Shown: one piece after another, positions 783-62,001 of the stretch
Numbering within the stretch: position 1 is the first letter of the stretch
How the letters are laid out: every line of letters starts with the position of its first letter
Source of the DNA: Octopus sinensis
Taxonomy: Eukaryota
Assembly (NCBI RefSeq): GCF_006345805.1
Contig: NC_043017.1
Location: forward strand, 186,001 to 250,000
Length of the DNA: 64,000 nt
Direction of reading: 5' to 3'
Position numbers and translations under genes: made by a program
The notes under the pieces: model-generated
Database searches by the model: none
What the model was told of the DNA's origin: nothing
Seen by the model: the letters and a program-made list of their open reading frames with translations, nothing else

Positions 783-1345
783 TTGATACTTTGATACTTT
801 GATAGGTTTCGACCATTATTGGCCCAGGCCATGTCTAATTTAATAGCACCACCAGGTGAAGTCTTTCAAGTCAGAATTTGGGCACTATGGCCCACTCAAG
901 TAGAGAGTTATTGTTTACAGAGACATATCCGGGTGTAGGGGGTTTATCCGGGATTCCTTGAAGGAATCTGTCCAAAGACTTCTTGAACCCTATAGGGTCA
1001 GTTTCTGTTTTAATGTGTTTTGGTGTAATGTTAAAGAGAGCGGGGCCAATTGAGGTGAAATAATTGTGCCGTATTGTTGTTATGAGATGAGAGTGCGATT
1101 TTTGTTGTGGGTGGATGGCACAGGGCCCAAGCCTTGGATGTACCTTAAAGGTGATGCCAACATCATTTGGGCAATGCTGATGGAATATTTTCCACATCAT
1201 GCAGATGATGTAGCACTTACGGCGACGTTGGAGAGAATAAAGTTTTAGCTTTTCTAGTCGACCCCAATAGTCGAGGCCTGTCATGCCATCTATCTTTTTT
1301 GTGATTGGGTCTGTTTCGGGGATGAGTTTCACCAACATTTACAAC
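783..1345 (-). mobile_element. 5'-truncated LINE 3' end (CR1/L2-group-like ORF2 C-terminus, 3' UTR and (ATCAAAGT)n tail)
   Basis: ORF 871-1338(-) has YWGRLEKLKLYSLQRRR and FKKSLDRFLQGIPDKP, homologous to the C-terminus of the 985-aa ORF at 32425. It is a diverged sister family. Confidence 0.85.
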
Positions 1346-1800: not shown

Positions 1801-2139
1801 ATGTAGCTAAATCATTCATTATGTCAATAAATGTTATAATATTATTATTATGGTTTTCTGTTAGATATATACCCTTCATTAGCCTTCATTTTCTGAAAAA
1901 ATTGTCTAGATGGGCTATTTTTATCCAAAAGCTATTAGCATGGTTTGCTCCAAAACTGAAGAATTTGAAATAAAAAAGAAAGGACATTACACAGAATAAT
2001 GAAAACAACAATGGTGTTGCCATAGTGTGGAAACCAGCTGGGAAAAGTTTTATCAAAATTGATTACCAGAAAACTGAGAAATCCTAAATTCCACTTCTAA
2101 GCTATTGGTATGGTTCTGGGTGTATGTATATATCTTTTA

Positions 2140-2520
2140 TTTTTTGTTTCAGTCATCTGACTGCAGCCATGCTGGGGCACTGCCTTGAAGAATTTTTAGT
2201 CAGTCGAATCAACTGCAGTCCTTTTTTTAAAACCTGGTACTGATTAGTCCCTAACCCTAAACAGCTAAATTATAGGGATGTTAACAATGGTTGTCAAATG
2301 GCAGAAGGGCACAAATACAAAGACAGACAGACAGACACACACACACACAAACACATGCAATAAGCTTCCACGCAATTTTCATCAAACAAATCCATTTACT
2401 CACAAGGCACTGGTTAGCCCAGAGCTGTAGCAGAAGACATTTACCCATCGTAATGTGTAGTAGAATTGAACCCAAAGCCATGTGGTTAGGAAGCAAATTT
2501 GTTACCATAGAGCCATACCC
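2140..2520 (-). mobile_element. tRNA-derived SINE, family 1 (tail GGTGCYCCAGCATGGCC...TGAAAC)
   Basis: Reverse complement of the family seen complete at 36583-36982. Internal (CA)n. Confidence 0.8.
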
Positions 2521-2544
2521 AAGCCTATATCACATGATTATGTG

Positions 2545-4439: not shown

Positions 4440-4670
4440 ATTCTTTCATTCTTTTACTTGTTTCAGTTATTTGACTGTGGCCATGCTGGAGCACAACCGC
4501 GAAGGGTTTTACCTGAACAAATCAACCCCAAAACTTATTAGTTAATTCTATTGCTCTCTTTTGTTGAACCACTAAGTTATGGGAATGTAAACACACCAAC
4601 ACTGATTGTGAAGCAGTGATAGGTGAAGACAAACACAGACAGAAAGACACACAGACATATATACATACAT
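4440..4670 (-). mobile_element. SINE family 1, 3' half
   Basis: TTTCAGTTATTTGACTGTGGCCATGCTGGAGCAC is the reverse complement of the family tail. Confidence 0.75.
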
Positions 4671-4820
4671 AAATATATATAAAATATGAGTGGTTTGGCT
4701 CACTTGTGATCTAAACAAATAGGTACGCTAGGCAAGTGCTATAGTTGGTCGACCATCAGGCTTCAAGATCACAGTTAAGGGTGGATCTATGGATCTGTAT
4801 TAGGGTTCCGTTATAGCATA

Positions 4821-9381: not shown

Positions 9382-9442
9382 ATGGCGGTGCCCCAGCATG
9401 GCCACAGCTCATAAGCTGAAACTAGAATCAATCAATCAATCA
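9382..9442 (+). mobile_element. Extreme 3' stub of the CR1/L2-group LINE
   Basis: ATGGCGGTGCCCCAGCATGGCCACAGCTCATAAGCTGAAACTAG(AATC)n matches the 3' end at about 31664-31730. Confidence 0.9.
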
Positions 9443-26160: not shown

Positions 26161-26184
26161 TTGATATTTCTCTCTTTCTTTTTT

Positions 26185-26375
26185 CCCTCTTTTACTTGTT
26201 TCAATTTGACTGCAGCCATGCTGGAGCACCGCCTATAGACGAGCAAATCGACCCCAGGACATATTCTTTGGAAGCCTAGTACTTATTCTATCGGTCTCTT
26301 TTGCCAATTCGTTAAGTTACGGGGATGTAAACACACCAGCATCGGTTGTCAAGTGATGTTGGGGGACAAACGCAG

Positions 26376-26410
<35 letters not shown>

Positions 26411-26575
26411 CAACGAGCTTCTTTCAGTTTCTGTCTACCAAATCCACTCACAAGGCTTTGGTCAGCCCGATGCTATGGTAGAAGACACTTGCCCAAGGTG
26501 CCATGCAGTGGGAATGAACCTGGAACCATGTGGTTGGTAAGCAAACTACTTGCCACACAGCCACTCCTGTGCCTT
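26185..26575 (-). mobile_element. Full-length SINE family 1
   Basis: Head GGAGTGGCTGTGTGGCAAG, internal microsatellite and family tail. Confidence 0.85.
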
Positions 26576-26779
26576 TAATTTTTGTGTGGGATATTGTATT
26601 TCCTTTTCCCTTTCTGTAAACTGTCAAACTGAGCATTAACGCCGTACATATATGCGCACACACACACACGTGTGTATATATATATATATATATTAACACG
26701 TGTGTGTGAGTGCATATATATAGGGTGTTAATATATATATATTATCCAAATTGTACAGTATACATATCCATTATGACCA

Positions 26780-27717: not shown

Positions 27718-27748
<31 letters not shown>

Positions 27749-27920: not shown

Positions 27921-27954
<34 letters not shown>

Positions 27955-28248: not shown

Positions 28249-28281
<33 letters not shown>

Positions 28282-28538: not shown

Positions 28539-28578
<40 letters not shown>

Positions 28579-28716
28579 CATGCATATATATATATATATA
28601 TATATACATAATGCATTATTATATATATATATATATATACATACATGCATATAATATAATTATATATATATATATACATACATGCATATATATATATATA
28701 TATATATATACATACA

Positions 28717-28754
<38 letters not shown>

Positions 28755-28761
28755 CATGCAT

Positions 28762-28797
<36 letters not shown>

Positions 28798-28802
28798 GCA
28801 TA

Positions 28803-28835
<33 letters not shown>

Positions 28836-28869
28836 CATACATGCATATATATATATATATACATGCATC

Positions 28870-28903
<34 letters not shown>

Positions 28904-28928
28904 CATACATGCATATATAATATATACA

Positions 28929-28974
<46 letters not shown>

Positions 28975-29073
28975 CATGCATATTATATATATACATGCAT
29001 ATATATATATATATATATATATACATGCATATATATATATATATACATGCATATATATATTATATATACATGC

Positions 29074-29104
<31 letters not shown>

Positions 29105-29128
29105 CATGTGCATATATATATATATACA

Positions 29129-29172
<44 letters not shown>

Positions 29173-29212
29173 CAGGCATATATATATATATATATATATA
29201 CATACATGCTAT

Positions 29213-29246
<34 letters not shown>

Positions 29247-29976
29247 CATACATATACATACATGCATATATATATATATATACATGCATACATATACATA
29301 CATATAAATACACATACATGCATATATATACATACGTATAAATACACATACATGCATATACATACATACATATAAATACACATACATGCATATATATACA
29401 TACATATAAATACACATACATGCATATACATACATACATATAAATACACATACATGCATATATATACATACATATAAATACACATACATGCATATATATA
29501 CATACATATAAATACACATACATGCATATACATACATACATACATCATCATCATCTAACGTCCGTTATCCTTAGTGGCATGGTCTGACCAGAGCTAGTAA
29601 GCTGGAAGGCTGCACCAGACACCTGTTTGATTTGGCATGGTTCTCTATAGCTGGATGCCCTTCCTAATGCCAACCACTCAGAGAGAGTGTAATGGGGTTT
29701 TTTATGCACCATAGGGCATGGGTGCCAGTTATGCGTGACACCGGAATCTCCCACGACTGCTATTTTGCTTGGCTTGATGAGTCTTCTTCTGAAGCATGAC
29801 ATAATGCCAAAGGTTTCGGTCATAACGCTCCCAAAGGAACTCAGCCACTTGGCCTCCATGAGGATCGATGCTAGAATGGGACTATTTAAGGACCAGTGGA
29901 ATGACACCAACATCAGTCATGACCAGGATTTCAATTGACTTGATGGGTATTCTCAAGCAATATACACACACACACA

Positions 29977-30016
<40 letters not shown>

Positions 30017-30399
30017 TATATACATGCATATATATACATATATATATGTATATATATACATATATATATACATGCATATATATACATATATATATGTATA
30101 TATATACATATATATATACATGCATATATATACATATATGTATATAATACTTATGTATACATACATATATATGTATACATACATATATATGTATACATAC
30201 ATATATATACATACTTATGTATACATACATATATACATATATATATACATATATATATATACATGCATAAATATACATACATATACATACATACATATAT
30301 ATATCCATGCATAGATACACATACATATATATATATACACATAAATATATATATACATATACATACATACACATACATATATGCATGCATAGATATACA

Positions 30400-30430
<31 letters not shown>

Positions 30431-30458
30431 ATATATACATACATATATATACATATAC

Positions 30459-30491
<33 letters not shown>

Positions 30492-30754
30492 CATACATAT
30501 ATATATATATATATGCATGCATAGATATACATACATATACATACATATATATATACATATACATACATATATATATATACATACATATATATATATACAT
30601 ATACATATGCATGCATAGATATACATACATATACATACATATATATATATATATACATACATACATACATATATGCATGCATAGATATACATACATATAT
30701 ATATACATATATATATACATACATATATATATACATACATATATATATATATAT
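27280..30754. repeat. About 3.5-kb compound (TA)/(TACA)/(TGCA) microsatellite array, interrupted by a family 3 SINE (-) at about 29540-29950
   Basis: Recurrent unit CATACATGCA(TA)n. Confidence 0.95.
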
Positions 30755-31730
30755 AGGACACTAAACACCTGAGGACACTAAACACCTGCAATGTGAGCTG
30801 GACGAAATATACAAGTGGGCTGAAAAGAATACCATGCAGTTCAATGCTGGAAAGTTTCAAGCTTTATACTATCAGCATGCAAAACTGAATGCAATACCCA
30901 ATGAATACACTGGACCCGGAGGGATTGCAATCCCAGAGGCACAATCAGTGCGTGACCTGGGTATTCACATGAGTGATGACGCGACCTTTCATGTACATGT
31001 TGCTAAACTGACACTGAAATGTAGACGGCTGGCTGGATGGATTCTTAGAACCTTTAGAACAAGAGAACAAGAAACCATGATGGTCCTCTGGAAGACACTT
31101 GTCCTAAGCCACTTTGACTATTGCTCTCAGCTATGGTCACCATCCAGTGTCAAGTTGATCACAGAACTTGAGGCGACCCAACGAAGCTACACAAAGAGAT
31201 AGCCTCTATGCAGAATGTAAGCTACTGGGAAAGACTCAAGAGATTAAAATTATATTCCTGGAGCGTAGGCGGGAAAGATATGCCATAATATACATCTGGA
31301 AGATCCTGGAGGGAGGTGTCCTGAACTTTGGCATCGAGAGTTACGCAAATGCCAGAACTGGGCGCCACTGCGTGGTGCCTAGGACTCCAAACCTGCCATC
31401 AAGATGTAGGACAAGATTCTGTGATAGCCTGGGCTTCCGAGGCCCACAGCTCTTCAATATCCTCCCGAAGAACCTGAGAGACCAGCATGGGGTGGATACA
31501 GATGTCTTTAAAATGAAGCTGGATCTCTTCCTGTCAGGTGTCCCAGATGAACCAACTTCACGGCAGGAGGGGCAGATGAGGGCAGCTGCATCGAACTCTC
31601 TCATGCACCAAATAGCAGTTGCTAGAAAGCCTCCATGAAGTGAAACCAAGTAGCAACACCAAATGGCGGTGCCCCAGCATGGCCACAGCTCATAAGCTGA
31701 AACTAGAATCAATCAATCAATCAATCAATC
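30755..31730 (+). mobile_element. 5'-truncated CR1/L2-group LINE (RT C-terminus, 3' UTR, (AATC)n tail)
   Basis: ORFs 30834-31202 and 31168-31638 match the end of the 985-aa ORF, with a 1-bp deletion near 31197. Confidence 0.92.
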
Positions 31731-31734
31731 ATAC

Positions 31735-31767
<33 letters not shown>

Positions 31768-31769
31768 CA

Positions 31770-31838
<69 letters not shown>

Positions 31839-31842
31839 CCCA

Positions 31843-32080
31843 AAAAAAAGCAACAAGAATGGATCGGTAGATTAGTACAATTGTTTCATACTAAAAACAT
31901 TTAATTTCAAGCTGCAAATATTACAGCAAATATAATGTCAAGTATTCATCAGCTAAATCACATATAGGTTTTCCATATATTCTTAGAGAGTGTAAATATC
32001 CTTATGAAGTTATAACTTCATAAGGATATTTAGTATGAAACAATTGTACTAATCTACTGATCCATTCTTGTTGCTTTTTT
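31843..32080. mobile_element. Fold-back HHR element (family G) with a central 38-bp perfect palindrome
   Basis: About 52-bp arms at 31843-31895 and 32029-32080; palindrome at 31994-32031. Confidence 0.9.
31870..31959 (-). ncRNA. Type-I hammerhead ribozyme with canonical core and extended stem II
   Basis: GAUUUAG-CUGAUGA-AUACU...AGUAU-GAAAC AAUU GUA-CUAAUC. Confidence 0.85.
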
Positions 32081-32199
32081 CTTGATTATAATCACCCCAC
32101 ATAATTTTATGGTTAATACCATAAGGAATCTTGGTGCATCTAAGTTAAGTACCATATTCATTTGAATTCTTTTGAATCTTAATTGTTTTTGCTGAAATT

Positions 32200-32230
<31 letters not shown>

Positions 32231-32424
32231 CATACACATATATATATACATTCATACATATATATATATATATATACATTAATACATATATATATATATA
32301 TATATATATATTAATACATATATATATATACATTAATACATATATATATATATACATTAATACATATATATATATATACATTAATACATATATATATATA
32401 CATTAATACATCCACCTCACCTCG

Positions 32425-35382
32425 ATGCTCCTACTGAACATGAGAGGGCTGCAAACACTCAGTAACAGGACAAAAATCCCGTTCTTGAGAGACTTTGTTG
32501 CATGCAATCAAGCCTTATGCATAGCACTCACAGAAACGCACCTGAAACCGGACATAGCAGATGCGGAGTTACACATACCACAGTATGTTGTACTACGAAC
32601 CGACAGAAAAGAAAGGAGTCATGGAGGAGTTGCTATGTACATCCGTGAGGACCTCACACCCCAGGTCCTCTTGTCATACTCAAACTCGGTGTGTGACACA
32701 CTAATTGTACATGTAAGGCAACTTGATATAGTTGTGTGTGCTACATATCGCCCTCCAGATGCCCCAAGCCATGTGGGCAAGTTTGAAGACTGCCTTATAA
32801 AAATAGAAGTTCTAATCACATTAGAACAACACATAAGTGTACTTCTTATGGGAGACTTCAATCTACCCAATGTCAGATGGCCCGAGGGCCTTTCTCTCCC
32901 AGGAATGACAAGATGTGAACAAGGACAGGCGAGGTCCCTCCTGAACCTCATCAACACCCTGTACAGGGAGCAAGTAATACTCCAACCAACCAGGGCAAGT
33001 AACACACTGGATCTCTGCTTCACAAATGACATGGATCTCATCCATAATGTGAAAGTGACACTGACACTACTCTCGGATCACAACATGGTAGAGCTGACCA
33101 TGTACAGGCCAAAAGGGAGCACGGACATGCTGCCTACAAGAAACCCTCAGAATCTTTCCAGCTTGAACTACCATAAGGCAAACTGGAAACAAATTGAGAA
33201 AGAGATCCTCAAACAAAACTGGCCTAAATGTCTCTCCTCGCCAGACATCGACGTGAAACTTAAACAATTCATGTCTGTAATGCAAGCCATATGCTATAAA
33301 TGTGTCCCAGAGAGAAAGGCCACTGTACACAAGAACAAAATCCCCAGAGAGAGGAAAATTTTAATGAGATGGCGTACAAAAATTTCAAATCGCCTAAACA
33401 AACAGATTGAAAGCAGTGAAAAGTCCCGCCTAAAAATAAAACTGTTGGAAATTGAAAAATGTCTGCAACTCTCCCATGAAAAAGAAAGAGCAGACAAAGA
33501 AGCCTGGGCTATAGACAACATAAAATCTAACCCCAGAGCTTTCTACAGGTATGCCAAAGAAACAGCTACAGTGCACTGTAGAATAGGGCCACTCCTTGAA
33601 AAGGATGGCACACTTACAGGAAAACCAATGAGGGTAAGTGAAATACTGAATGAGCAATTCAAGAGTGTTTTCACTCCACCCCTTGGGCATCTCCAAATCA
33701 CCAATCCAACTGACTTCTTTACCACTGCAGATATAAAATCAGAGGCGGCGACGATAGATTACATCGATATAAAGGAAGACGATGTAATCAAGGCTATAGA
33801 TGAAATGAAAACAGACTCAGCTACTGGCCCCGATGGATTCCCGGCAATCCTCCTAAAAGCATGTAAGAGAGTCCTAGCAAGACCACTGCAGTTCCTCTTT
33901 CAGAGCTTCCTTGCAGCTGGCAAACTTCCAAGAAAACTGAAGGAAGGTAAAATATGCCCCATTCATAAAGGAGGTAGCAGAGCGGAGGCCAAGAACTACA
34001 GACCTATCTCTCTGACCTCACACATCAGCAAGGTCATGGAACGAATAGTCAGAAAGAAACTGATCACCTTCCTTGAAGAGAATGACTTGCTGCCCGACAC
34101 CCAACATGGTTTCCGACCAGGGAGAAGCTGTTTAACTCAGCTCCTACAACACTATGACTGGGTGCTGAAACGGCTGCTCAACCACTCAAATGTGGAAGTG
34201 ATATATCTCGACTTTGCAAAGGCCTTTGATAAAGTCGATCATGGAATGATATGTCACAAACTGCGTGATCTCAACATAGTTGGAAAACTGGGAGAATGGC
34301 TTCATGACTTTCTGAAAGATAGAAGTCAGGTGGTAGTAGCCAATGGGGCCACTTCCATTAACACGCAAATAGTGAGCGGTGTTCCGCAGGGCACTGTTCT
34401 GGCACCACTACTTTTCATAATGGCCCTCTCAGACATGCCCTCAGCCATGCAGAGAGCCACGATCACAAGTTATGCAGATGATACAAAAGTTTCACAGGCA
34501 ATACAGAACCCTGAGGACACTAAACGCCTGCAATGTGAGCTGGACAAAATATACAAGTGGGCTGAAAAGAATAGCATGCAGTTCAATGCTGAAAAGTTTC
34601 AAGCTTTATACTATCAGCATGCAAAACTAAATGCAATACCCAATGAATACACTGGACCCGGAGGAATAGCAATCCCAGAGGCACAATCAGTGCGTGACCT
34701 GGGTATTTACATGAGTGATGACGCAACCTTTCGTGTACATGTTGCTAAATTGGCAATGAAATGTAGACGACTGGCCGGATGGATTCTCAGAATCTTTAGA
34801 ACAAGACAACAAGAAACCATGATGGTCCTCTGGAGGACACTTGTCCTAAGCCACTTTGACTACTGCTCTCAGTTATGGTCACCATCCAGTGTCAAGTTGA
34901 TCACAGAGCTCGAGGCGATGCAGCGTAGCTACACAAAGAAGATAGCCTCTATGCAGAATGTAAGCTACTGGGAAAGACTCAAGAGATTAAAACTATATTC
35001 CTTGGAGCGTAGGCGGGAAAGATATGCCATAATATACATCTGGAAGATCCTGGAGGGGCGTGTCCCAAACTTTGGCATCGAGAGTTACACGAATGCCAGA
35101 ACTGGGCGCCACTGCGTGGTGCCTAGGACTCCAAATTTGCCATCAAGATGTAGGACAAGATACTGTGATAGCCTGGGCTTCCGAGGCCCACAGCTCTTCA
35201 ATATCCTCCCGAAGAACCTGAGAGACCTGCATGAGGTGGATGCAGATGTCTTTAAAATGAAACTGGATCTCTTCCTGTCAGGTGTCCCAGATGAACCAAC
35301 TTCACGGCAGGAGGTGCAGATGAGGCCAGCTGCATCGAACTCTCTCATGCACCAAATGGCAGTTGCTAAAAAGCTTTCGTGA
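32425..35382 (+). CDS. Intact LINE ORF2: APE endonuclease plus reverse transcriptase (CR1/L2-group-like, no RNase H seen)
   Basis: 985 aa uninterrupted. APE motifs LNMRGL, TETHL, YRPP, GDFN and SDH; RT motifs [24 protein letters not shown] and YADD. 3' UTR and (AATC)n tail to about 35466. Confidence 0.97.
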
Positions 35383-35830
35383 AGTAAAACCAAGTAGCAA
35401 CACCAAATGGCGGTGCTCCAGCATGGCCACAGCTCATGAGCTGAAACTAGAATCAATCAATCAATCATATATATATATATACATTAATACATATATATAT
35501 ACATACATATATATATACATACATACATACATATATATACATACATACATATATATACATACATACATATATATACATACATACATACATACACACATAC
35601 ATACATACATATACATACATATATATACATATATATATACATACATATATATATATACATATGTATATATACATACACATATATATATACATATGTATAT
35701 ATACATACACATACATGTACATCTATATATATGTATACCTACATGTACATCTATATATATATATATGTATACCTACATATACATATCTATATATGCCTAC
35801 ATATACATATATCTATATATGCCTACATAT

Positions 35831-35861
<31 letters not shown>

Positions 35862-36284
35862 CACACACACACATACATACATACACATAAACAGACAAAG
35901 CCCGCATTTACTGTAGGTAATTGGTGCATACATTTGTGATTTCTGTGAAATTTGTAACTTGCCTAATTCTGTCTCCATAAATAATCTCACAGATTAATGT
36001 TGTTGTTGTTGTTTTGAATTCTTCACTCATGCAACACTTTGATGCTTTCATACTTCAAATGGACATCAAAACATGTTATTTGAAATACAAATGTCTAAAT
36101 TCCACCCTTCACTCACACACTTTTTTCCTTACAGCTAATTCTCCATCTGTCTCTTTGTTGATCTATCTATACATATGTATGTTTGCATGTATGCGTGTAT
36201 GTATGTATGTCTGTATGTATTCATACAGATATACACACACGTACACTCAAGTATATATATATAAACGCACACACACACATATAG

Positions 36285-36982
36285 GTGTAGGTGTGACTGT
36301 GTGGTAAGACACTTCCTTCCCAATCACATGGTTCCGGGTTCAGTCCCACTGTGTGGCACCTTGGGCAAGTGTCTTCTACTATATCCTCAGGCCAACCAAT
36401 GCCTTGTGAGTGAATTTGGTAGATGTTGGAGTGTTCACATCCCCGTAACTAAGTGGTTCAACAAAAGAGACTGATAGAATATGTACTAGGATTTAAAAAA
36501 GTCTTTGGGGGAAATCCTTCAAAGCAGTACTCCAGCATGGCCTCAGTCAAATGACTGAAACAAGAAAAGGAATAAAAGAGAGTGGCTGTATGGTAAGAAG
36601 CTTGTTTCTCAACCACATGGTTCCAGGTTCAGTCCCACTGCGTGGCACCTTGGGCAAGAGTCTTCTACTATAGCCTTGGTCTGACCAAAGCCTTGTGAGT
36701 GAATTTGGTAGACAGAAACTGAGAGAAGCCTGTCCTGTGTGTGTGTGTGTATGTATATATATATATATTTATGTGTGTGTTTGTCCCCCCCACCACCACC
36801 ACCATAGCTTGACAACCGATGTTGGTGTTTTTACATCACTGTCACATTAGCGGTTCAGCAAAAAAGAGACCGATAGAATAAGTACTAGGCTTACAAAGAA
36901 CAAGTCCTGGAGTCCAGTTGTTCAACTAAAAGGTGGTGCTCCAGCATGGCCAGTCAAATGACTGAAACAAGTAAAAGAGTAA
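36285..36982 (+). mobile_element. Two tandem SINE family 1 copies (about 36285-36580 and 36583-36982)
   Basis: Heads GTGGYTGTRTGGTAAG and GGTTCAGTCCC; tails CCAGCATGGCC..CAGTCAAATGACTGAAAC. Confidence 0.85.
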
Positions 36983-37384
36983 ATTACAGAAGACTCCCAC
37001 CAACTGAAATATAAACGATCAAAACCAACTAAATTTGCTCCCTCATAAAACCATTACGTGTAAACCGCAAGCTGATTGGTTACAATAAAGTGGGGGTCTA
37101 TGCCAGTGATATGAGTACGCCTGAGAAACGAAGTTTAAGCTGCATGTGGTTTGGTGAAAACCCTATTCTAGAAATCCAGCTTATTGGATTTTTCGAAGAG
37201 GTATAGAAAGAAAGAAGTCAGTCATTTAACTACAGTTGTCAAGAACTCAACTGTCAAATAAATACATATTTTGAAACCTGAGGATTACTACGAACATATG
37301 AAAGTGCTGTTTGAACTTTATTCAACTGATATGTTCTATACACATTTACACAAATTCAAAAAGTGTGTATATACACACACACAC

Positions 37385-37417
<33 letters not shown>

Positions 37418-37889
37418 CATTTGGGTGGGTGAGTGTGTTGTGTGTGTATGCATGCATAACTAAACTACAAATGTGTGGTTTATCTTATTTCCATGAATAT
37501 AAGATAATATTCCAAAAGTACCTACCAAATAAACTTACAACATTAACTTGGTCTAAAATTGTATAAAAATTCTATAAATTACCATTTATAGAATATTTAA
37601 CAGTATTAGTTTCCATTTAAATTCAATTGCTTCTTTCAAATGTTTAAATTTACTTATCTTAAACAAAACTCTCTTTCTCTCGCCAATTTTTTGTTTATTT
37701 GTTAATTGGATGCATTCATGTTGTTGCATAAACAATTAAGAGCACTTGCAGTACAGTTTGTAACTTTGAAAAAGGTTTTGTTTATTTATATATTTGGAGT
37801 TATTTTTACCAGTGGCTGTAAATTGTCCCTGTATCAATCTTGTAACTCATCATTTTAAACATATCACTTTATCACCCTCTCTCTCTCAC

Positions 37890-38345
37890 ACACACACACA
37901 TACATCCATGTAAATATATACACATCCAAATACATACATGACGGGGTCCTTTCTGTTTCCATCTACCAAATCCACTCCCAAGACTTTGGTCAACCCAATG
38001 CAGTAAAAGAAGACGTCTAAGATGTCATGCAATGGGACTGAACTCAAAACAACACAGTTGGAAAGCAACACGGTTCTAAACCATGCAGCAGCCATGCGTC
38101 ATTATAGGTGCACGCAAGCACACACACATAAATATGTGTGTGTGATATGACTCTCTAATTAATATAGATATACCGCCTGACTAGCACCCACTACACTCTC
38201 TGAGTGGTTGGCATTAAGAAGTTGCATCCAGCTGTAGAAACTGCCAGATCAAGATTGGAGCCTGGTGCAGCCATCTGGTTCAGTCAAATCATCCAACCCA
38301 TGCTAGCATGGAAAGAGGACATTAAACGATAATAATGATGATTAA
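37890..38345. mobile_element. Family 1 SINE 5' half (-) and family 3 SINE (+)
   Basis: CTACCAAATCCACT...GGGACTGAAC, then CACTACACTC...CATGCTAGCATGGAAAG. Confidence 0.7.
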
Positions 38346-38743
38346 CTCTTAATTACAATTTTAAAATGCACACACACAAATTTATATCCTTTTATTAGTT
38401 TTAAGTCACTTAACTTTGGCCCTGCTGGGGAAATACCTCCTCTGGTGGATTACATTGAACGCAGTTTTTATTGAATCAATCTTAGAAGAATGAATGGTGT
38501 AATGAGTCTGACAAGGGATTGAATTTAGTACCTTAACCACATTTAGAATTTAACCACACAATGCTAAGTCTGATGCTCAACCAGTTCTGCTAATAACCCA
38601 TCACAAATTAATAACTGAGAACTATATAGAAATGAAAGATAGAACAGATCACATCTTTCTCCATTACATTTGTGAGTTCTTTATTTCCTTGAAGATGATT
38701 GTAAACAATGTTAGTATGATTATTGTGATGTTCTGCATTTCAG

Positions 38744-38827
38744 GGCTGGTTGACTGATGCAGTTCCTTGGGGTCCCATGGCATATGAAGTTTTGAAAATT
38801 TTAGATATAACTAATAGGAACACTTGA
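38744..38827 (+). other. Candidate host exon (GWLTDAVPWGPMAYEVLKILDITNRNT*)
   Basis: Acceptor TTCTGCATTTCAG and a non-repetitive, protein-like translation. No homolog recognised. Confidence 0.25.
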
Positions 38828-39249
38828 ATTAATATATGCACTTGAAACAGCCGTAGATAAAGATATTGGTGTAGACATATACTTATAATGTATATACAAT
38901 CAAGGAATAACACTACCTGAGAAACTTATGATGGAAACTTTAAAACAAGGCTTTACTTAGAAGACCAGTGGATCACCAGACATGGTGCTTTGACTTGATT
39001 TGGTCTCTTCAGTGATAAATACCTTGAATATATCTTGAGTTAAGCCAAAATATGTTTGTTTTAATGTAGAAATCAGTGAACAAAACATTTACTGATTCAT
39101 GTGGAAGTTAGCCAAGCTACTATTAAAGTGACATGCACATTTGAATTAGTCTTATAATAAAAATATCAGGGTGTGTACACATTTATAATGCATGCACAAA
39201 TGTGGAATGGCACAAGCTGTGATATTTGTTCTCAGAGAAACTTATCTTT

Positions 39250-39810
39250 TATCTTGTTTCTGTCAGTAGACTGTGGCCATGCTGGAGCACCACCTTGAAT
39301 AATCTTTAGTCAAATGAATTGAAGCTAGCATTTATTTGTTATTTTTTTTTGTTTACGCCTAATACTTTTTCCATCAGTTTCTTTTGCTGAACCACTAAGC
39401 TACAGGAACATAAAACACCTGTTGTCCAAGAAGTGTGGTGGAGGGTGACAAACACAGACACAAAGAGATACACACACACGTGATTGCTAAATCCACAAGT
39501 TTTTATTCTCCCTCTGTTTATTTCCTCATGTTCCTTTTTGTTGAAGAGCACAGGCTTGAAAAGTAAAAGACTTTCTCACTTTCCTGAGCGTCAAACTATT
39601 ACACCTACTTGTTTATACACCTGTCTTCATCTTTTGTTTTTCTGTAAATTTAACCTATATAATATATATATATGCACATACAATGGGCTTCTTTTAGTTC
39701 CCATCTACCAGATCCACTCACAAGGCTTTGTTTCAGCCTGAGGCTATAGTAGAAGACATTCGCTCAAGGTGCCATGCAGTGGGACTGAACCTGCAGCCAT
39801 GTGGTTGAGC
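39250..39810. mobile_element. Family 1 SINE (-) halves flanking a family E HHR repeat (+, about 39490-39650)
   Basis: Family E motif UUGUUGAA-GAGC acag GCUU-GAAA at 39538-39561. Confidence 0.65.
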
Positions 39811-40076
39811 AGTGATGAGACTTTTGCATTAAAAACACATGACTTAGCTCAAAATACTGGTGTTTCATGAAATAAAGGTTTTCTACATGGTTTGGTATCA
39901 AAACAACAAGGACATTCTGAGTTAAGCAGAAAAATCACTTGTTCTGATACAAAAATTGGTAAATGAAGCATTTCCTGATTTGTGACAGCTAACGAGTTTA
40001 AAATTCAATTAATACAAGCAACTGAAGCAACCTTAGATCAAAATAATGTTGAATATACATATTTTTACTGTATGTA

Positions 40077-40292
40077 GAGGGTTGGCCAAAAGTCACCTGA
40101 CAGTACATCAAAACCATTTATTTATTAACAACTGAATGAATTTCATAAAAGCATCTAAATATGAAACATCATGGGAATTGTTCAAACTGAAGTCCTTCTT
40201 GAGTGACACATTTTTTTCATTCGAGTCAATACAGAATTACAGAATATTTATGGAATTTTGATTTAATGCCGGGTGACTTTTGGCCAACCCTG
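40077..40292. mobile_element. Tc1/mariner-type MITE with about 23-bp TIRs and TA TSD
   Basis: TA-GAGGGTTGGCCAAAAGTCACCTG ... CGGGTGACTTTTGGCCAACCCTG-TA. Confidence 0.9.
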
Positions 40293-40558
40293 TACATATG
40301 CTGTCAAAACATATGTAAGTCTGTATCTATATATATAAATGTGAATTAAAGATAATGCTAACACTACTTTGTCATAATCCTTAAGAAACTGCACCAGTGC
40401 TATAGTAGGGTTGCAATTGTAATGGTTACTAATCAATGCAGTAGAAACGTGTAGGTCTGCTTGGAGCTGGATGTATATAAAAAGGAATTAAAAGTAATGC
40501 TAACACTACTTGTAATAATCCTTATTATTATTATTATTATTATCATTTTTATTGAGAT

Positions 40559-40643
<85 letters not shown>

Positions 40644-40652
40644 TATATTCAG

Positions 40653-40706
40653 ATGAATATGGTACTTATGTTGAGGCACCAGAATTCAGTACAGTATTAT
40701 CCATTG
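40653..40706 (+). other. Candidate 54-nt phase 1-1 host exon (DEYGTYVEAPEFSTVLSI)
   Basis: TTTATATTCAG acceptor, GTAAAA donor and an open, protein-like frame. Confidence 0.35.
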
Positions 40707-40935
40707 GTAAAACATGTTCTTTGTCTATCTCCTTATCCTCTTGGAGAATTTAGATAAAATTATACTAATGTGTCCTTCTAATTTAATTAAATTCTATGTC
40801 TTTGTGCAGCTATGTCTTTGTACATTTTAAATTGATGTAATGAAATGATTGCATTCTTCAATTAAATAGAGTCGCATGAAACAATCATACTGCATTACCT
40901 CTGGATATCCTTGTTGCTTATTTTGATTATATATA

Positions 40936-41200
40936 TCTATATATATAAAACTCAACTTGTGTGTATCTGTGTGTGTGTGTCTGTGTGTTTAACTTCCCGG
41001 CACATCTCCTCCTAGCCAACAAATCGTAGAACCACCAAAAATGGGTCACTTAAAGTTTAGGCGAATGAAAATTGAACTGCGCTATTTCTGTTCCGAAATT
41101 CATCTTGCAAGTGCAAAAATCGATAATGTGTTTGTTTAGGCCTTATCCCATGCATTGAATAGTGAACTTTACTCAGTCAGACATGAACTGTGTTCACCAC
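40936..41200 (+). mobile_element. Non-autonomous Helitron-like 5' portion
   Basis: A|TCTATATATATAAAA start followed by a (GT)/(GTCT) microsatellite; no CTAG end found. Confidence 0.45.
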
Positions 41201-41289
41201 ACCTGCAAGCATGCGTAAATTGCATGAAATATATATATAAATTAGAAAAATAAAATATATATATATATATATATATACGTGTTTGTGTG

Positions 41290-41490
41290 TGTGTACCTGT
41301 GTTTGTCACTGCCAACATTGCTTGGCAACCGATGCTGGTGTGTTTACATCCCTGTAACTTAGTGGTTCGGCAAAAAAGAGACCAATAGAATAAGTACTAG
41401 GCTAACAAAGAATAAGTCCTGGGGTTGATTTCTTTGACTAAAGGTGGTGCTCCAGCATGGCCGCAGTCAAATGATTGAAACATAAAAGAA
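41290..41490 (+). mobile_element. SINE family 1, 3' half
   Basis: AAAGGTGGTGCTCCAGCATGGCCGCAGTCAAATGATTGAAAC. Confidence 0.8.
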
Positions 41491-41514
41491 TATGTATATG
41501 TGTGTGTGTGTATA

Positions 41515-44039: not shown

Positions 44040-45766
44040 ACTCTAGGCACAAAACCCGAACTTTTTGTGGAGGGGGCCAGTTGATTAGATCAACCCCAGT
44101 ACACAAACGGTAATTTATCGACCCCGAAAGGATGAAAGGCAAAGTTGATCTCAGTAGAATTTGAACTCGGAACATAAAAACAGATGAAATATCACTAAGC
44201 ATTTCACCTGGCATGCTAACATTTCTGGCAGCTTACCGTCTTAAAACTAAATATTAGTATTATTTAGAGTGGTGAAGCGTTGGCACTGGGAAAAATGCTT
44301 AGAAGCATTTTGTTTGTCTTTACTCACTGAGTTCAAATTCTACCATCTTTCATACTTTCAGTGGGGCGGTGGGAGGGGGGTAATAAAATAAGTACCAGTT
44401 GAACTCTGGGGTTGATGTAATTGACTTATCTTCTCCACTGTGGCAAAATTTGAAATCAACATTAGAATAATTTTTTTTCGCAGTTACAGCAGTGAACTCG
44501 CAGTATGATTAGAAAGTCAGAAAAATTGCAAAGTGATATTGGTTCCTGCTCTGTACATTCTGAGATCTGATCATGCCAAGGTCATTTAGCTTTTCATTCT
44601 TTTCAGATCAATATAATAAAGTACCTAACATATACTGGGGTCAGTGATATCAACTAATTCCCCTCCCCTCAAAATTACTACCTTTTGCCAAAATTTGAAG
44701 TAGTCATGTAGCAATGTCTTGAAGAATTTTTAGTCAAGTGAATTGACCCCAGTGCATTCTTTTTTTTTTAAAGCCTGGTTCCCTATATTGGTCTCTTTCA
44801 AAGAACTGTTATGGAGATGGAAACAAATCAACTCCAGTTGTCAAGCAGTAATCGAGGACAAACACACACGGGTTTCTTTCAGTTTCTCTCTACCAAATCC
44901 ACTTATGAGGCTTTGCTTGGCCTGAGACTATAGTAGAAGAGTGGGAATGAAGCCAGAAGCATGTGGCTGCGAAGCAAGCTTCTTACCACACAGCCATGCC
45001 TGTGCCATGCATATGGCTACTTTCCTTTACAAACTTTCAAATCCTACCTGGATTCACTTTGCTTTTTCTGCTTTCAAGGTGAACACTATTATTTATGCGC
45101 CCTTTCCAAGCCCAGCCAGGCTCATGGGCTTGGTTTCCCGGTTTCTATGGCCTATGCATTCCCCCCAGCTGGACGGGACACCAGTCCATCGCAGCGTTAC
45201 TCAAGAAACAGGAAGAGAGAGTGAGAGAAAGTTGTGGCGAAAGAGTACAACAGGGGTTGCCATCACCCCCTGCCAGAGACTCTTGAAGCTTTAGGTGATC
45301 CTTTGACTGCAAATCCACTGCCCTAACCACTGGGCCATTGCGCCTTCACATTTCAAGGTGACCACAATTATATAAATATCAAAACAAAAGCTGATGTCCA
45401 AAAAAATAATGTTGGTCGATCAGGAAAGGTGGGATTACGATAATTGTCTCAAAGAAGTTGACAGAGAAGTAGACTGTGATCGGCATGGTGCTGCAGCATG
45501 GCCACAAAAGAAAGAACAATGGAATGACTGTAGTAAAAATATAAAGGAGAGAGAGAGAGTGAAAGAGAGAGAAGGGTAAACGAGCAAGATGATAATGGAG
45601 GTAGGAGGAATGGGTATGAAAAGGTGAGTGAGGAGAGGAGTGAGGTGGAGTCACTGAATGGTTAAGAAGCCTGCTTGGGGGTCAGTCTCGCGTCTGCTAC
45701 TAAAACCTCAGGCTGACCAAAGCCTTTTGAGTGGATTTGGTAAACGGAAACTGAAAGGTACCTGCC

Positions 45767-45807
<41 letters not shown>

Positions 45808-46075
45808 GGTGAATGTATGCACATGTGTGAGAGAGTGTGATTGTGTATGCGTGTTCATGTGCGTGTGTGTATGTCTCACTTGTGTTTATGTTTACACCAC
45901 CACCACTTGACAACAAGTGTTGGTTTGTTTACATCCTCTTAGTGGTTCAGCAAAATGATATCAACACAATAAGAAGCAGGCTTAAAAATAGGTTACTGGG
46001 GTCAATTTGATTGTTTCAAGGTGGTGTTCCAGCATGGCCACACTTCAATGAGAGAAATAAGTAAAAGATTACAAT
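44040..46075. mobile_element. SINE cluster: three family 2 copies, family 1 (-) at about 44700-44995, family 4 (-) at about 45130-45348 and family 1 (+) at about 45650-46075
   Basis: Diagnostic family motifs repeated elsewhere in the window. Confidence 0.7.
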
Positions 46076-47252: not shown

Positions 47253-48182
47253 ATACATATATATGTTGTCTTTTAGAATATCATTGGGGAGGGGGCTAAA
47301 CCGATTACATGAACCTCAGTGTTCAACTGGTACTTATTTCATCGACCCCAAAAGGATGTAAGGTAAAACTGACCTCAGCAGAATTTGAACTCAGAATGTA
47401 AAAGTGGGTGAAATGCTGCTCAGTACAGTACCTAGTGTGCTAACGATTCTGCCAGCTAACCAGGTTATGAAAGCTATAAATAAAAGCATGCAAATACTAG
47501 CTTGCTTCTTTAAAAGTTTATAAAATTCTTGACATCAACAAGATATATATATATTTAATAAATAAATAAATAAAACATATGCATATATACATACATATAT
47601 GTACGTACTCGTACCTACCTCTACATGTATATATACATGCATATATGGGTATAGGACACCAAAAAAAAATGTTGAACACAATGAGAAATGAAAGCATAAA
47701 CACAAAACCAAGGAACTGGACATTTTTCTTAAACAACGATAAAATAGAGTACAGGACGAATAACACAAGGAAAATTCCCCTTCTTCAGTCGCCATGGTTT
47801 CATCTACTCTGCGTTTCGAAGGTGAAGGCGATGCGCATCTTCGATTGAAACTTTCCTTCCCGCGGAAAGCAAATTAAATAAAATTTGAGATCTTTTTGCA
47901 GAGGGGTAAAAATGGTAACAAAAACAGGACAGTAACGACAGTACAAAATATAAACAGTAAAAGACAGGACAAGGAGAATAACAAGATAGATAAAATTATA
48001 TTGGATTTTACTCATAAGGTATTGGAATATTATATGTATAGCATTCTACCTAAAAAAATGGATCTACAAATGCAATATCCCTACATATCTCACATCTATT
48101 TTCTTTTTATTTCCTCCACTTCACTCTCTATTTTATATCTTATCCAAATAAACTATTTCTTAACCATACTCTCACACCCTCA

Positions 48183-61444: not shown

Positions 61445-61760
61445 CTTTTTCTTGTTTCTTGTTTCAGCCATTGGACTGCGGCCATGCTGGGGCACTGCCT
61501 TGAAGAATTTCAAGTCAAATGAATTGACCCCAGTACTTTTTATCCATTTTTTTTTTTCCTAAAGCATATTACTTTTTTATCGAGCCCTTTTGCTGAACTG
61601 CTAGGTTCTGGGGACATAAACACACCAATTCTAGTTGTCAAATGGTGTGGAATGGGGGGGGGGGACAAAACCCAGAGACAGACACACATGCATGCACACA
61701 CACGTAGACACACACGATGAGCTTCTTTCGGTTTCCATCTACCAAATCCAAGGCTTTGCT
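61445..61760 (-). mobile_element. SINE family 1
   Basis: GTTTCAGCCATTGGACTGCGGCCATGCTGGGGCAC tail. Confidence 0.75.
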
Positions 61761-62001
61761 CAGAAAAGGGAAACTTGAGTTGAGATCAACAGAGTTAAGG
61801 CATTGATGGCCTATGCACCACATGGAGTGAGTGGAGGCACATGGATTAGTGGTTGGGGTGTTGTGTTCTTCTGCAAAACACTTCATTTCATGTTGCTCCA
61901 GTCCTTATTGATAAGGTGTTGAAATTGTAAAGATTTCTGGTTGGTAACTGATAAGGGACGAGTGTGTCCATGTCCTTTGTGTGCTTCTTTCTTTTTTTCA
62001 G

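What the first reader, a model, noticed from the sequence alone, without database searches (positions are those of the whole stretch)
35409..41480. LINE and SINE share a 3' end with a sequence-divergent but structure-conserved hairpin
Seen: LINE end GGCGGTGCTCCAGCATGGCCA-CAGCT catg AGCTG-AAAC (35409-35447). SINE family 1 end GGTGGTGCTCCAGCATGGC-CAGTC aaat GACTG-AAAC (36932-36968, also 41443-41480). Both have a 5-bp stem and 4-nt loop with compensatory changes. The sister LINE at 783-860 keeps GGTGGTGC...CATGGCC...GAAAC. Known: stringent LINEs recognise a 3' stem-loop that partner SINEs borrow. Inference: the intact ORF2 family at 32425, or a close relative, mobilises this abundant SINE.
Basis: partly seen in the sequence, partly recalled or inferred. 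Interest (0 to 1): 0.7.

Follow-up and report, generated by a model that had tools for sequence, protein, structure and literature searches.

The report
LINE and SINE share two-hairpin tail
An octopod jumping gene (a CR1-like LINE) and the abundant short parasite element around it (a tRNA-derived SINE) end in the same 39-base, two-hairpin RNA signal. This is the textbook way a SINE borrows a LINE's copying machinery, so the case is ordinary in kind, but it is apparently undescribed for octopus.

Summary
A 39-nt module (GGYGGUGCYCCAGCAUGGCC-N-CAGnn..nnCUG-AAAC) ends three copies of one LINE family and at least nine SINE copies in the window. A 19-mer from it occurs 12 times against 0.01 expected. 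LINE–SINE similarity is confined to this module.

The "invariant" 5' part is itself a hairpin, HP1: 7 bp, a conserved 1x1 mismatch followed by a G·U wobble, and loop YCCA.

All members fold the same way on the sense strand only. On a 20-sequence alignment, 93% of cells pair and 9 of 12 pairs show double changes.

The module is better conserved than coding sequence: HP1 is 90–100% identical against 59–70% for the last 300 coding nt. It recurs in four other octopod LINE subfamilies, in a second LINE lineage, and in a 43%-identical LINE from another organism.

The LINE is CR1-like, not RTE. Relatives carry a PHD-type ORF1.

Mobilisation by this LINE family is well supported by inference. Mobilisation by the copy at 32425 is not. 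That copy is 5'-truncated and young. The SINE copies are old, and their HP2 and tail match no sampled LINE.

Verdict: a new member of a known kind.

The parts
32411..35467 (+). Family-A LINE copy. It is 5'-truncated, with no 5'UTR, but has an uninterrupted ORF2 and a complete 3' end.
   Evidence: ORF list. Pfam finds Exo_endo_phos_2 and RVT_1. The 5' boundary was set against L001. Flanking TA-rich matches.
32425..35382 (+). ORF2, 985 aa, with an APE endonuclease and a reverse transcriptase.
   Evidence: It is 88% identical to P0001, 64% to P0002 and P0003, and 57% to an Argonauta hians protein.
35409..35428 (+). HP1 of the LINE module: GGCgGUGC-UCCA-GCAUgGCC. It has 7 bp, a G.G mismatch followed by a G.U wobble, and a 4-nt loop.
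   Evidence: MFE and consensus folds. HP1 is 90-100% identical among LINE subfamilies.
35430..35443 (+). HP2 of the LINE module: CAGCU-CAUG-AGCUG.
   Evidence: Covariation.
35444..35467 (+). Single-stranded AAAC followed by the tail TAGA(ATCA)4.
   Evidence: The same tail occurs at 31704-31731 and 9423-9442.
30765..31731 (+). Second family-A LINE copy, 5'-truncated at about aa 695. Module at 31665-31703.
   Evidence: tblastn. 95% nucleotide identity over 465 nt to the copy at 35003-35467.
9384..9442 (+). Tail-only family-A LINE copy, consisting of the module plus (ATCA)n.
   Evidence: 96.9% identity over 64 nt. Covariance model score 59.4 bits.
783..1332 (-). Family-B ('sister') LINE 3' fragment. 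ORF remnant at 877-1332, module at 806-853 with an extended HP1, tail (ATCAAAGT)n at 783-805.
   Evidence: Relatives L092 (83% aa) and L093 (66% aa) keep the architecture.
36580..36981 (+). Full-length SINE copy. It has a tRNA-like head, a CORE-like CTTGGGCAAG, an internal microsatellite and a body. Module at 36932-36968, tail AAGTAAAAGA.
36281..36570 (+). SINE copy with an internal deletion. Module at 36523-36561.
41261..41492 (+). 5'-truncated SINE copy. Module at 41443-41481.
26181..26577 (-). Full-length SINE copy. Module at 26198-26233, with a 3-nt deletion in HP2.
2138..2527 (-). SINE copy of the subfamily with the AAATTCTTCAA insert. Module at 2146-2184.
4444..4679 (-). 5'-truncated SINE copy. 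Module at 4460-4498.
39252..39812 (-). SINE copy. Module at 39256-39294, with HP2 partly broken.
45686..46068 (+). SINE copy. Module at 46020-46058, decayed.
61454..61764 (-). SINE copy. Module at 61461-61499 with HP2 CAGUC-CAAU-GGCUG, the U.G wobble intermediate.
38399..38437 (-). Diverged module at the end of a different tRNA-like SINE. HP2 is AAGU..ACUU, so the closing pair has changed from C-G to A-U.
   Evidence: Covariance model score 22.2 bits, E 3e-4. Sequence read.

Best explanation
**What it is.** The 39-nt module is the 3'-terminal recognition signal of an octopod CR1-like LINE family (family A).

**Structure.** On the sense RNA it forms two adjacent hairpins.
- HP1 has three basal pairs (GGY/RCC), a 1x1 mismatch, an invariant G.U wobble, three more pairs and the loop YCCA.
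- HP2 has a fixed CAG/CUG base and a variable apex.
- An A-rich single strand (AAAC) and a subfamily-specific microsatellite follow.

**How it works (inferred).** The LINE's ORF2 protein binds this module on its own transcript. It then starts target-primed reverse transcription from the tail repeat.

**The SINE.** It is a Pol III, tRNA-derived, CORE-type element. It acquired the module from a family-A LINE at its 3' end, so the family's ORF2 protein copies it in trans.

**Shown versus inferred.**
- Shown here: homology, its restriction to the module, strand-specific conserved folding, covariation, and stronger conservation than the coding sequence.
- Inferred from experimental precedent in L2-clade LINEs: protein binding and trans-mobilisation.

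**Which LINE was the donor.** It was most probably an older family-A subfamily with an L004-like HP2 ending in ..AAU. The young, 5'-truncated subfamily at 32425 is less likely.
For: **Real repeat.** 12 copies of the 19-mer occur against 0.01 expected. The covariance model gives 13 strong hits.

**Position.** The module sits 7-26 nt after the stop codon and directly before the microsatellite. This holds in the window LINE and in L001-L004, which are 57-88% identical in protein.

**Extent of similarity.** SINE-LINE similarity is confined to the module. The junction is the same in 9 SINE copies with different flanks.

**Folding.**
- Every member gives the same two-hairpin MFE, with ensemble frequency 0.44-0.96 and z from -1.2 to -3.4.
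- The antisense strand gives inconsistent folds with z near 0.
- The G.U and U.G pairs work only in the sense RNA.

**Pair counts.**
- A2: 95.2% of cells paired, against 22-44% when the partners are slid.
- A3 (20 sequences): 93.2% paired, 9 of 12 pairs with double changes, 0 of 500 shuffles as high.

**Selection.**
- LINE subfamilies: last 300 coding nt 59-70% identical, module 80-90%, HP1 90-100%.
- SINE copies: body 70%, HP1 87%.

**Depth.**
- Family B (window 806-853, L092, L093) keeps the architecture, with an extended HP1 and different HP2 sequences.
- L090, a LINE from another organism (43% aa identity to the Argonauta family-A protein P0004), has GGCGG-AUU..AAU-UGGCC with three double-changed pairs. 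The covariance model finds it right after its stop codon (19.2 bits, E 3.6e-4).
- L007 and L011 fold alike.

**Precedent.**
- ZfL2 ORF2 binds its cognate 3' stem-loop, and the loop gives specificity (PMC4176376).
- A UnaL2 stem mismatch and bulge are required for retrotransposition (PMC1636434).
- The CR1 3'UTR hairpin plus microsatellite is conserved (PMC4316615).
Against: - No functional assay exists. Binding and mobilisation are inferred.
- No sampled LINE has the SINE's HP2 (CAGUC-AAAU-GACUG) or its tail (AAGTAAAAGA). Only about nine octopod-type LINE 3' ends could be reached, and no octopod genome could be scanned.
- By the ZfL2 precedent, loop differences can abolish cross-mobilisation, so HP2 differences may matter.
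- SINE copies are much older than the LINE copies in the window.
- Independent covariation events are few, because the sequences are related by descent. The shuffle control is not a probability.
- Folding z-scores of single 39-mers are modest.
- SINE target-site duplications could not be defined.
- L094-L096 (a family-B relative) lacks HP2, so HP2 may be dispensable in some lineages.
Confidence: 0.75

Rival explanations
1. The subfamily represented at 32425-35467 is itself the current driver of this SINE.
For: - It is the only copy in the window with an uninterrupted APE+RT ORF.
- HP1 is identical to the SINE's apart from Y3.
- The subfamily is young and recently active, with copies 95-97% alike.
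- If HP1 is the specific handle and HP2 only needs to pair, any family-A subfamily could serve.
Against: - The HP2 apex, its loop and the tail repeat differ from those of the SINE.
- The SINE's HP2 is closer to the Argonauta-type LINE.
- SINE copies here average 73% pairwise identity, so they are much older.
- This copy lacks its 5'UTR and promoter.
- In ZfL2 the loop is the specificity determinant.
Confidence: 0.2
2. The module is a relic. The SINE is, or was, mobilised by another LINE clade present in octopus (RTE, Dong-R4 or L1-Tx1), for instance through its A-rich end.
For: - Those clades are reported as recently active in O. vulgaris (PMC13282606).
- The SINE tail AAGTAAAAGA is A-rich and does not match the family-A repeats.
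- SINE tail exchange is common (PMC5786205).
Against: - HP1 is conserved at 87% among SINE copies against 70% for the body. It is retained in at least two SINE subfamilies and in a second SINE family, which argues for selection in the source genes.
- No similarity to any other LINE part was found.
- The tail is not poly(A).
Confidence: 0.07
3. The hairpins are conserved for a job other than ORF2 recognition. Candidates are transcript 3'-end formation or stability, binding of a host factor, or a DNA-level role in priming or second-strand synthesis.
For: - Nothing here measures protein binding.
- The module abuts the microsatellite at which priming occurs.
Against: - The sense-strand-only structure with G.U pairs argues against a DNA-level or antisense role.
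- Sharing between a Pol II LINE and a Pol III SINE argues against a polymerase-specific termination signal.
- No Rfam family matches.
Confidence: 0.08
4. The shared end is not a SINE module at all. It results from chance similarity, or from short 5'-truncated LINE tails that happened to insert beside unrelated SINEs.
For: Tail-only LINE copies do exist, for example 9384-9442.
Against: - The body-module junction is identical in 9 SINE copies at different loci.
- SINE-type HP2 and tail are distinct from the LINE type in every copy.
- Chance expectation is 0.01.
Confidence: 0.01

Closest known systems
Eel UnaL2 / UnaSINE1 and zebrafish ZfL2-1 / ZfL2-2 (L2 clade, 'stringent' LINEs)
   Same: - The SINE and the LINE share a short conserved 3' tail.
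- A stem-loop containing a functionally required mismatch or bulge lies just upstream of a short tandem repeat.
- ORF2 recognises the stem generally and the loop specifically (PMC1636434, PMC4176376).
- UnaL2 is also a single-ORF element of about 3.6 kb (my own knowledge).
   Different: - Here there are two adjacent hairpins rather than one long interrupted stem.
- The sequence is unrelated to the L2 tail. The GGAUA-type loop I recall for L2 is absent.
- The PW..E..W motif of the L2 conserved tail-binding region was not evident when I read the octopod ORF2 by eye.
- Nothing has been assayed.
CR1 LINEs and their SINE partners (turtle CR1 / Pol III-SINE; bivalve CORE-CR1 and Meta-CR1-Zenon partnerships)
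   Same: - The LINE is CR1-like. Its ORF2 is 29% identical over its full length to a contig with an avian-CR1-type 3' end (L028).
- Relatives carry an ORF1 with a PHD finger.
- The 3'UTR is a hairpin plus a microsatellite (PMC4316615).
- Mollusc SINE-LINE tail homologies are 35-61 bp at 72-95% identity (PMC11481361). Here the figure is 39 nt at about 77-88%.
   Different: - Octopod family A shows no ORF1 in the 3.2-3.7 kb contigs L001-L003.
- The microsatellite unit varies between subfamilies instead of being a fixed octamer.
- The exact clade (CR1, CR1-Zenon, L2 or other) was not determined.
Octopus CORE-type tRNA SINEs (OR1/OR2 and OK of Ohshima & Okada 1994; 'SINE/tRNA-Core' in recent annotations)
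   Same: - A tRNA-like head with A and B boxes 43 nt apart.
- A CORE-like CTTGGGCAAG start.
- High abundance in an octopod genome (PMC4824008, PMC8967140).
   Different: - I could not compare against the published consensus sequences, so identity with OR1, OR2 or OK is unverified.
- The searchable literature assigns these SINEs no LINE partner. In the 2026 O. vulgaris annotation, 893 of 900 recently active SINE families are 'unclassified'.
RTE-clade LINEs and RTE-tailed SINEs (Bov-B/Bov-tA; Ceph-SINEs; RTE-2_OV of octopus brain)
   Same: - A single ORF of about 1,000 aa in an element of about 3.2 kb.
- A very short 3'UTR ending in a microsatellite (PMC9115989, PMC5786205).
   Different: - The closest relatives have a PHD-containing ORF1 and CR1-type features.
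- The RT motif is SGVPQG rather than the RTE/L1-type RQGC (motif knowledge is my own).
- The SINE body has no similarity to the LINE 5'UTR, so it is not a bipartite RTE-type SINE.

Membership tests
Stringent-type LINE/SINE partnership (shared 3' tail) | The SINE 3' end is homologous to the extreme 3' end of a LINE in the same genome. | tested here: met
   A 39-nt module is shared, and similarity is confined to it.
Stringent-type LINE/SINE partnership (shared 3' tail) | The shared region forms a conserved stem-loop. | tested here: met
   The same two-hairpin MFE appears in all members. 93% of cells are paired and 9 of 12 pairs show double changes. The structure is sense-strand specific.
Stringent-type LINE/SINE partnership (shared 3' tail) | The same terminal tandem repeat occurs in the SINE and its partner LINE. 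| tested here: not met
   The SINE has AAGTAAAAGA-type tails. The LINEs have (ATCA)n, (AATTA)n, (AAATA)n, (ATACAAG)n and (ATCAAAGT)n. The repeat also differs between closely related LINE subfamilies, so this carries only weak weight.
Stringent-type LINE/SINE partnership (shared 3' tail) | The SINE has a Pol III (tRNA-type) internal promoter. | tested here: inconclusive
   An A box (1-2 mismatches) and a B box (2 mismatches) lie at a constant 43-nt spacing. ARAGORN and Rfam detect no tRNA.
Stringent-type LINE/SINE partnership (shared 3' tail) | The LINE's ORF2 protein mobilises the SINE in trans, and this depends on the tail. | not testable with these tools
   This needs a retrotransposition assay.
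Stringent-type LINE/SINE partnership (shared 3' tail) | The LINE and the SINE were active over overlapping periods. | tested here: inconclusive
   In the window the LINE copies are 95-97% alike, while SINE copies average 73%. A genome-wide age landscape was not available.
CR1-like LINEs (CR1/L2 group) | ORF2 has an APE endonuclease and a reverse transcriptase. | tested here: met
   Pfam finds Exo_endo_phos_2 (2.5e-10) and RVT_1 (8.6e-32).
CR1-like LINEs (CR1/L2 group) | ORF1 has a PHD or esterase domain. | tested here: inconclusive
   It is absent from the window copy (5'-truncated) and from contigs L001-L003. It is present, as a PHD finger, in the ORF1 of about 42%-identical relatives L089 and L090.
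CR1-like LINEs (CR1/L2 group) | The 3'UTR has a hairpin followed by a microsatellite. | tested here: met
.
CR1-like LINEs (CR1/L2 group) | The RT domain is placed inside the clade in a phylogeny with reference elements. | not tested
   No reference set (Repbase/RTclass1) was available. The only indirect evidence is 29% full-length identity to a CR1-type contig, L028.
RTE-clade LINEs | RT phylogeny, a single ORF, and no PHD-type ORF1 in relatives. | tested here: not met
   The single ORF and the 3.2-kb size fit. However, the nearest relatives carry a PHD-containing ORF1, and the nearest identifiable element is CR1-type. No phylogeny was made.
CORE-SINE superfamily | A conserved CORE central domain lies downstream of the tRNA-like head. 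| tested here: inconclusive
   CTTGGGCAAG is found at the expected position in three full-length copies. The comparison with the MIR/CORE consensus rests on memory and on the published classification of octopus SINEs as tRNA-Core.

The most novel reading that the evidence does not exclude
The two-hairpin module may be an ancient, cross-phylum recognition element of one CR1-like lineage.

- HP1 is the universal handle for ORF2p. It combines a basal GGY/RCC stem, a 1x1 mismatch and an obligate G.U wobble.
- The fast-evolving HP2 apex, together with the tail repeat, would act as a specificity code. That code would sort LINE subfamilies and SINE subfamilies into cognate sets.

On this reading, the octopus-specific SINE expansion (about 10% of the genome) was driven by an ORF1-less CR1-like family. 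It was not driven by the RTE or Dong-R4 elements that have drawn attention in octopus brain. The partner of each SINE burst could then be read off its HP2 type.
Probability: 0.3. Interest if true: 0.6.

Novelty: new member of a known kind. Interest (0 to 1): 0.4.

Why it matters
SINEs are the signature repeat of octopus genomes. They have been linked, controversially, to genome reshuffling and to neural expression. Current annotations nevertheless leave almost all octopus SINE families unclassified, with no autonomous partner named.

A defined 39-nt module and a named LINE family give three practical things:
- a handle, in the form of a covariance model, for classifying SINE subfamilies;
- a way to date partner activity;
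- a basis for designing a retrotransposition assay.

The conserved mismatch-plus-G.U hinge parallels the element required in eel UnaL2, in a different clade and phylum. That is useful for working out how stringent LINE reverse transcriptases pick their template.

None of this changes the accepted model. It extends it to a new host and a new LINE lineage.

Tried and rejected
**Wider searches that gave little**
None carried the sequence module.
- Pattern scans of bacterial/archaeal genomes gave only chance hits in GC-rich bacteria, and the scan of viral contigs gave no hit.
- A second protein search from the Argonauta protein added no new octopod subfamily.
- An exact look-up of the window ORF2 found nothing.

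**Negative or ambiguous tests**
- ARAGORN and Rfam found no tRNA and no known RNA family. The weak miRNA hits come from the internal microsatellite.
- Searching the literature for the motif string gave only irrelevant primer hits. No paper naming the octopus SINE's partner was found.
- Target-site duplications of SINE copies were ambiguous.

**Ideas rejected**
- A bipartite, RTE-like origin of the SINE body from the LINE 5'UTR is rejected, because there is no similarity outside the module.
- RTE-clade membership was considered because of the 3.2-kb single-ORF layout. It is rejected on the PHD-ORF1 relatives and the CR1-type similarity.
- The weak module-like hits at 45482, 51769, 56775 and 39730 are chance matches or belong to another repeat family.

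Full report
**Setting.** The window is AT-rich eukaryotic DNA, dense in (TA)n/(TACA)n microsatellites and interspersed repeats.

The ORF at 32425-35382 encodes 985 aa with an APE endonuclease and a reverse transcriptase. Its closest relatives are:
- an 88%-identical protein from a Logan assembly;
- two 64%-identical proteins from ENA metagenomes;
- a 57%-identical protein of the octopod Argonauta hians.

The host is therefore most probably an octopod. This is an inference.

**Checking the observation.** There are three small corrections.
- The second SINE module ends at 41481, not 41480.
- That copy reads GAUUG, which gives a G.U pair.
- The 36932 copy has a 2-nt deletion.

The 19-mer occurs 12 times with <=3 mismatches, against 0.01 expected. 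A covariance model built from 17 copies finds 13 strong hits in the window (50-62 bits; the sister LINE scores 36 bits). It also finds one diverged copy at 38399-38437(-), which ends a different tRNA-like SINE.

**Inventory.** Three copies of one LINE family ("family A") carry the module followed by TAGA(ATCA)n:
- the long copy, 32411-35467;
- a copy truncated at about aa 695, 30765-31731, which is 95% identical over 465 nt;
- a tail-only copy, 9384-9442, which is 96.9% identical.

A second LINE lineage ("family B") has a 3' fragment at 783-1332(-). It is 40% identical in protein over the last 160 residues.

nhmmer finds about 20 pieces of the SINE, and nine of them carry the module. The SINE has these parts:
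- a tRNA-like head, with an A box and a B box at a constant 43-nt spacing. ARAGORN and Rfam do not call it a tRNA;
- a CORE-like CTTGGGCAAG;
- an internal (TA)n(TG)n microsatellite;
- a body of about 130 nt;
- the module;
- an A-rich tail, AAGTAAAAGA.

**What the module is.** RNAalifold and every single-sequence fold instead give two hairpins.
- HP1 is G1-C20, G2-C19, Y3-G18, a G4.G17 mismatch, a G5.U16 wobble, U6-A15, G7-C14 and C8-G13, with loop YCCA.
- One spacer base follows.
- Single-stranded AAAC and the microsatellite come next.

The MFE structure dominates the ensemble (frequency 0.44-0.96), and z-scores run from -1.2 to -3.4. The antisense strand gives different structures in each member, with z near 0. 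Several pairs are G.U or U.G, which cannot form on the other strand. The structure therefore belongs to the sense RNA.

**Covariation.** On the 17-sequence alignment, 95.2% of cells pair, against 22-44% when partners are slid by 1-3 columns. Four of the five HP2 pairs show double changes.

I then added two family-B relatives, a distant LINE (L090) and the diverged SINE copy. On that 20-sequence alignment:
- 93.2% of cells pair;
- 9 of 12 pairs have double changes;
- no shuffle in 500 reaches any observed measure.

The HP2 series reads like stepwise compensatory evolution:
- CAGCC/GGCUG in Argonauta L004;
- CAGUC/GGCUG with a U.G wobble in the SINE at 61461;
- CAGUC/GACUG in the main SINE;
- CAGCU/AGCUG, separately, in the window LINE.

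One caveat applies. The sequences are related by descent, so the number of independent events is perhaps six to eight. The shuffle control is not a probability.

**Selection.** Among the five family-A subfamilies:
- the last 300 coding nucleotides are 59-70% identical;
- the non-coding module is 80-90% identical;
- HP1 is 90-100% identical;
- the spacer between stop codon and module varies from 7 to 26 nt and is not conserved.

Among SINE copies the body is 70% identical, HP1 87% and HP2 82%. A non-coding element that outlasts the adjacent ORF, and that is kept by two unrelated transcription units, is under strong constraint.

**Depth.**
- Family-B relatives L092 (83% aa) and L093 (66% aa) keep GGUGGUGC..CAUGGCC, with an extended apical stem in HP1 and different but paired HP2 sequences.
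- L090, a LINE from another organism (43% aa identity to the Argonauta family-A protein P0004), has GGCGG-AUU-AAAC-UAAU-UGGCC, then GGUC-AUGU-GACC, UAAAC and (AACAAAT)n right after its stop codon. The covariance model finds it (19.2 bits, E 3.6e-4 in 11 kb). Its three apical HP1 pairs are all double-changed, while the basal stem, the G.G mismatch and the G.U wobble are identical.
- L007 (36% aa) and L011 (44% aa) fold the same way. L011 has a U.U mismatch followed again by G.U.
- Many other relatives have only a 14-20 nt 3'UTR before the microsatellite and no module. The module therefore marks a sub-lineage, not the whole clade.

**Which LINE clade.** The 3.2-kb single-ORF layout and the short 3'UTR suggested RTE. 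The evidence points to the CR1/L2 group instead.
- A contig with an avian-CR1-type 3' end aligns at 29% identity over residues 33-951.
- Relatives at about 42% identity have an upstream ORF1 with a PHD finger. This is the hallmark named in the title of Kapitonov & Jurka 2003, cited.
- CR1 3'UTRs are known for a conserved hairpin plus microsatellite (PMC4316615).

No reference phylogeny could be made, so the exact clade is open. Family A itself shows no ORF1 in contigs L001-L003.

**Who mobilises the SINE.** SINE-LINE similarity is limited to the module, and the SINE has the short family-A type of HP1 rather than the family-B type. Family A is therefore the source of the tail.

The specific copy at 32425 is a poor candidate for the driver, for four reasons.
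- It begins 14 nt upstream of its ATG. It lacks the 5'UTR and the N-terminal extension seen in L001 and L003, and its ATG aligns with an Ile codon in L001.
- Its HP2 apex and loop (CU/AG, CAUG) and its tail (ATCA)n differ from the SINE's (UC/GA, AAAU, AAGTAAAAGA).
- The SINE's HP2 is closer to the Argonauta-type LINE, and its ..AAU loop end is shared with L004 and family B. This suggests that an older, L004-like subfamily was the donor.
- SINE 3' halves average 73% pairwise identity (best pair 89%), against 95-97% for the LINE copies.

Experiments in zebrafish L2 elements showed that loops confer cognate specificity while stems are read generally (PMC4176376). If HP2 plays that role here, the partner is an unsampled subfamily. 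If the invariant HP1 is the specific handle, any family-A member could serve. The data cannot decide between these.

**What is known.** The principle has been textbook since Ohshima and Okada. It has been verified experimentally for UnaL2/UnaSINE1 and for ZfL2. Similar 35-61 bp tail homologies have been catalogued in bivalves.

For octopus I found no paper naming a partner.
- Octopus SINEs are labelled tRNA-Core or tRNA-Deu.
- In the 2026 O. vulgaris annotation, 893 of 900 recently active SINE families are "unclassified".
- Repbase could not be consulted, so prior curation there cannot be excluded.

**Verdict.** This is a new member of a known kind, with a modestly interesting structural detail: two hairpins, with a conserved mismatch plus G.U hinge that parallels UnaL2. 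Its practical value is for annotating the octopus SINE expansion.

Noticed in passing
window 18989-19340 (+); also 12182(-), 47697-47800(-), 48516, 54792, 55428(-), 56162-56562(-): A second abundant repeat family (GGTGGCACATAAAAACACCATCCGAGCGTGGCC...), with 62-bp tandem units at 19181-19340. It is unrelated to the module despite its GGTGG..GTGGCC ends.
   Followed up: no
window 11232-11400 (-): Read on the minus strand, this element ends ...CCCATGCTAACATGGAAAACAGATGTTAAAGGATGAT(AAT)n. It is another SINE-like 3' end, with its own palindromic hairpin and a different tail repeat. It is possibly the partner signal of another LINE.
   Followed up: no
window 36561-36590: One SINE (36580-36981) is inserted head-to-tail into the A-rich tail of another (36281-36570), with TAAAAGAG on both sides. 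This may reflect tail-directed priming or tandem SINE formation, as described in bivalves.
   Followed up: partly
window 9300-9480, 27300-32410, 35468-36280: All three family-A LINE copies lie inside TA/TACA-type microsatellite, with 15-33 nt flank matches. This is either a target preference for TA-rich repeats or microsatellite seeding from LINE tails. The interval 27.3-32.4 kb is almost pure microsatellite (GC 0.21-0.32).
   Followed up: partly
L094:777-830 (identical in L095 and L096): A family-B relative (59% aa) has a weakened HP1, then AAAAGC, then (ATCAAAGT)n, with no HP2. HP2 may be dispensable in some lineages, or this may be a decayed copy.
   Followed up: partly
window 38399-38640 (-): A different tRNA-like SINE carries a diverged copy of the same module, with the HP2 closing pair changed from C-G to A-U. 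The family-A tail has therefore been captured by more than one SINE family.
   Followed up: partly
window 17587-18069 (-) and 20912-22006 (+): Two further LINE pieces: an RT fragment only 30% identical to ORF2 (another LINE lineage), and an internal family-A fragment (aa 195-559, 90% identical) without a 3' end.
   Followed up: no
window 26364-26435 (-) and the equivalent position in other SINE copies: The SINE body contains an internal (TA)n(TG)n microsatellite of variable length. It produces spurious sub-threshold miRNA matches in Rfam.
   Followed up: no
window 44730-45008 (-): A SINE copy whose module has decayed almost beyond recognition (GACATTGCTACATGACTAC...). It shows that inserted copies are not themselves under constraint.
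   Followed up: no
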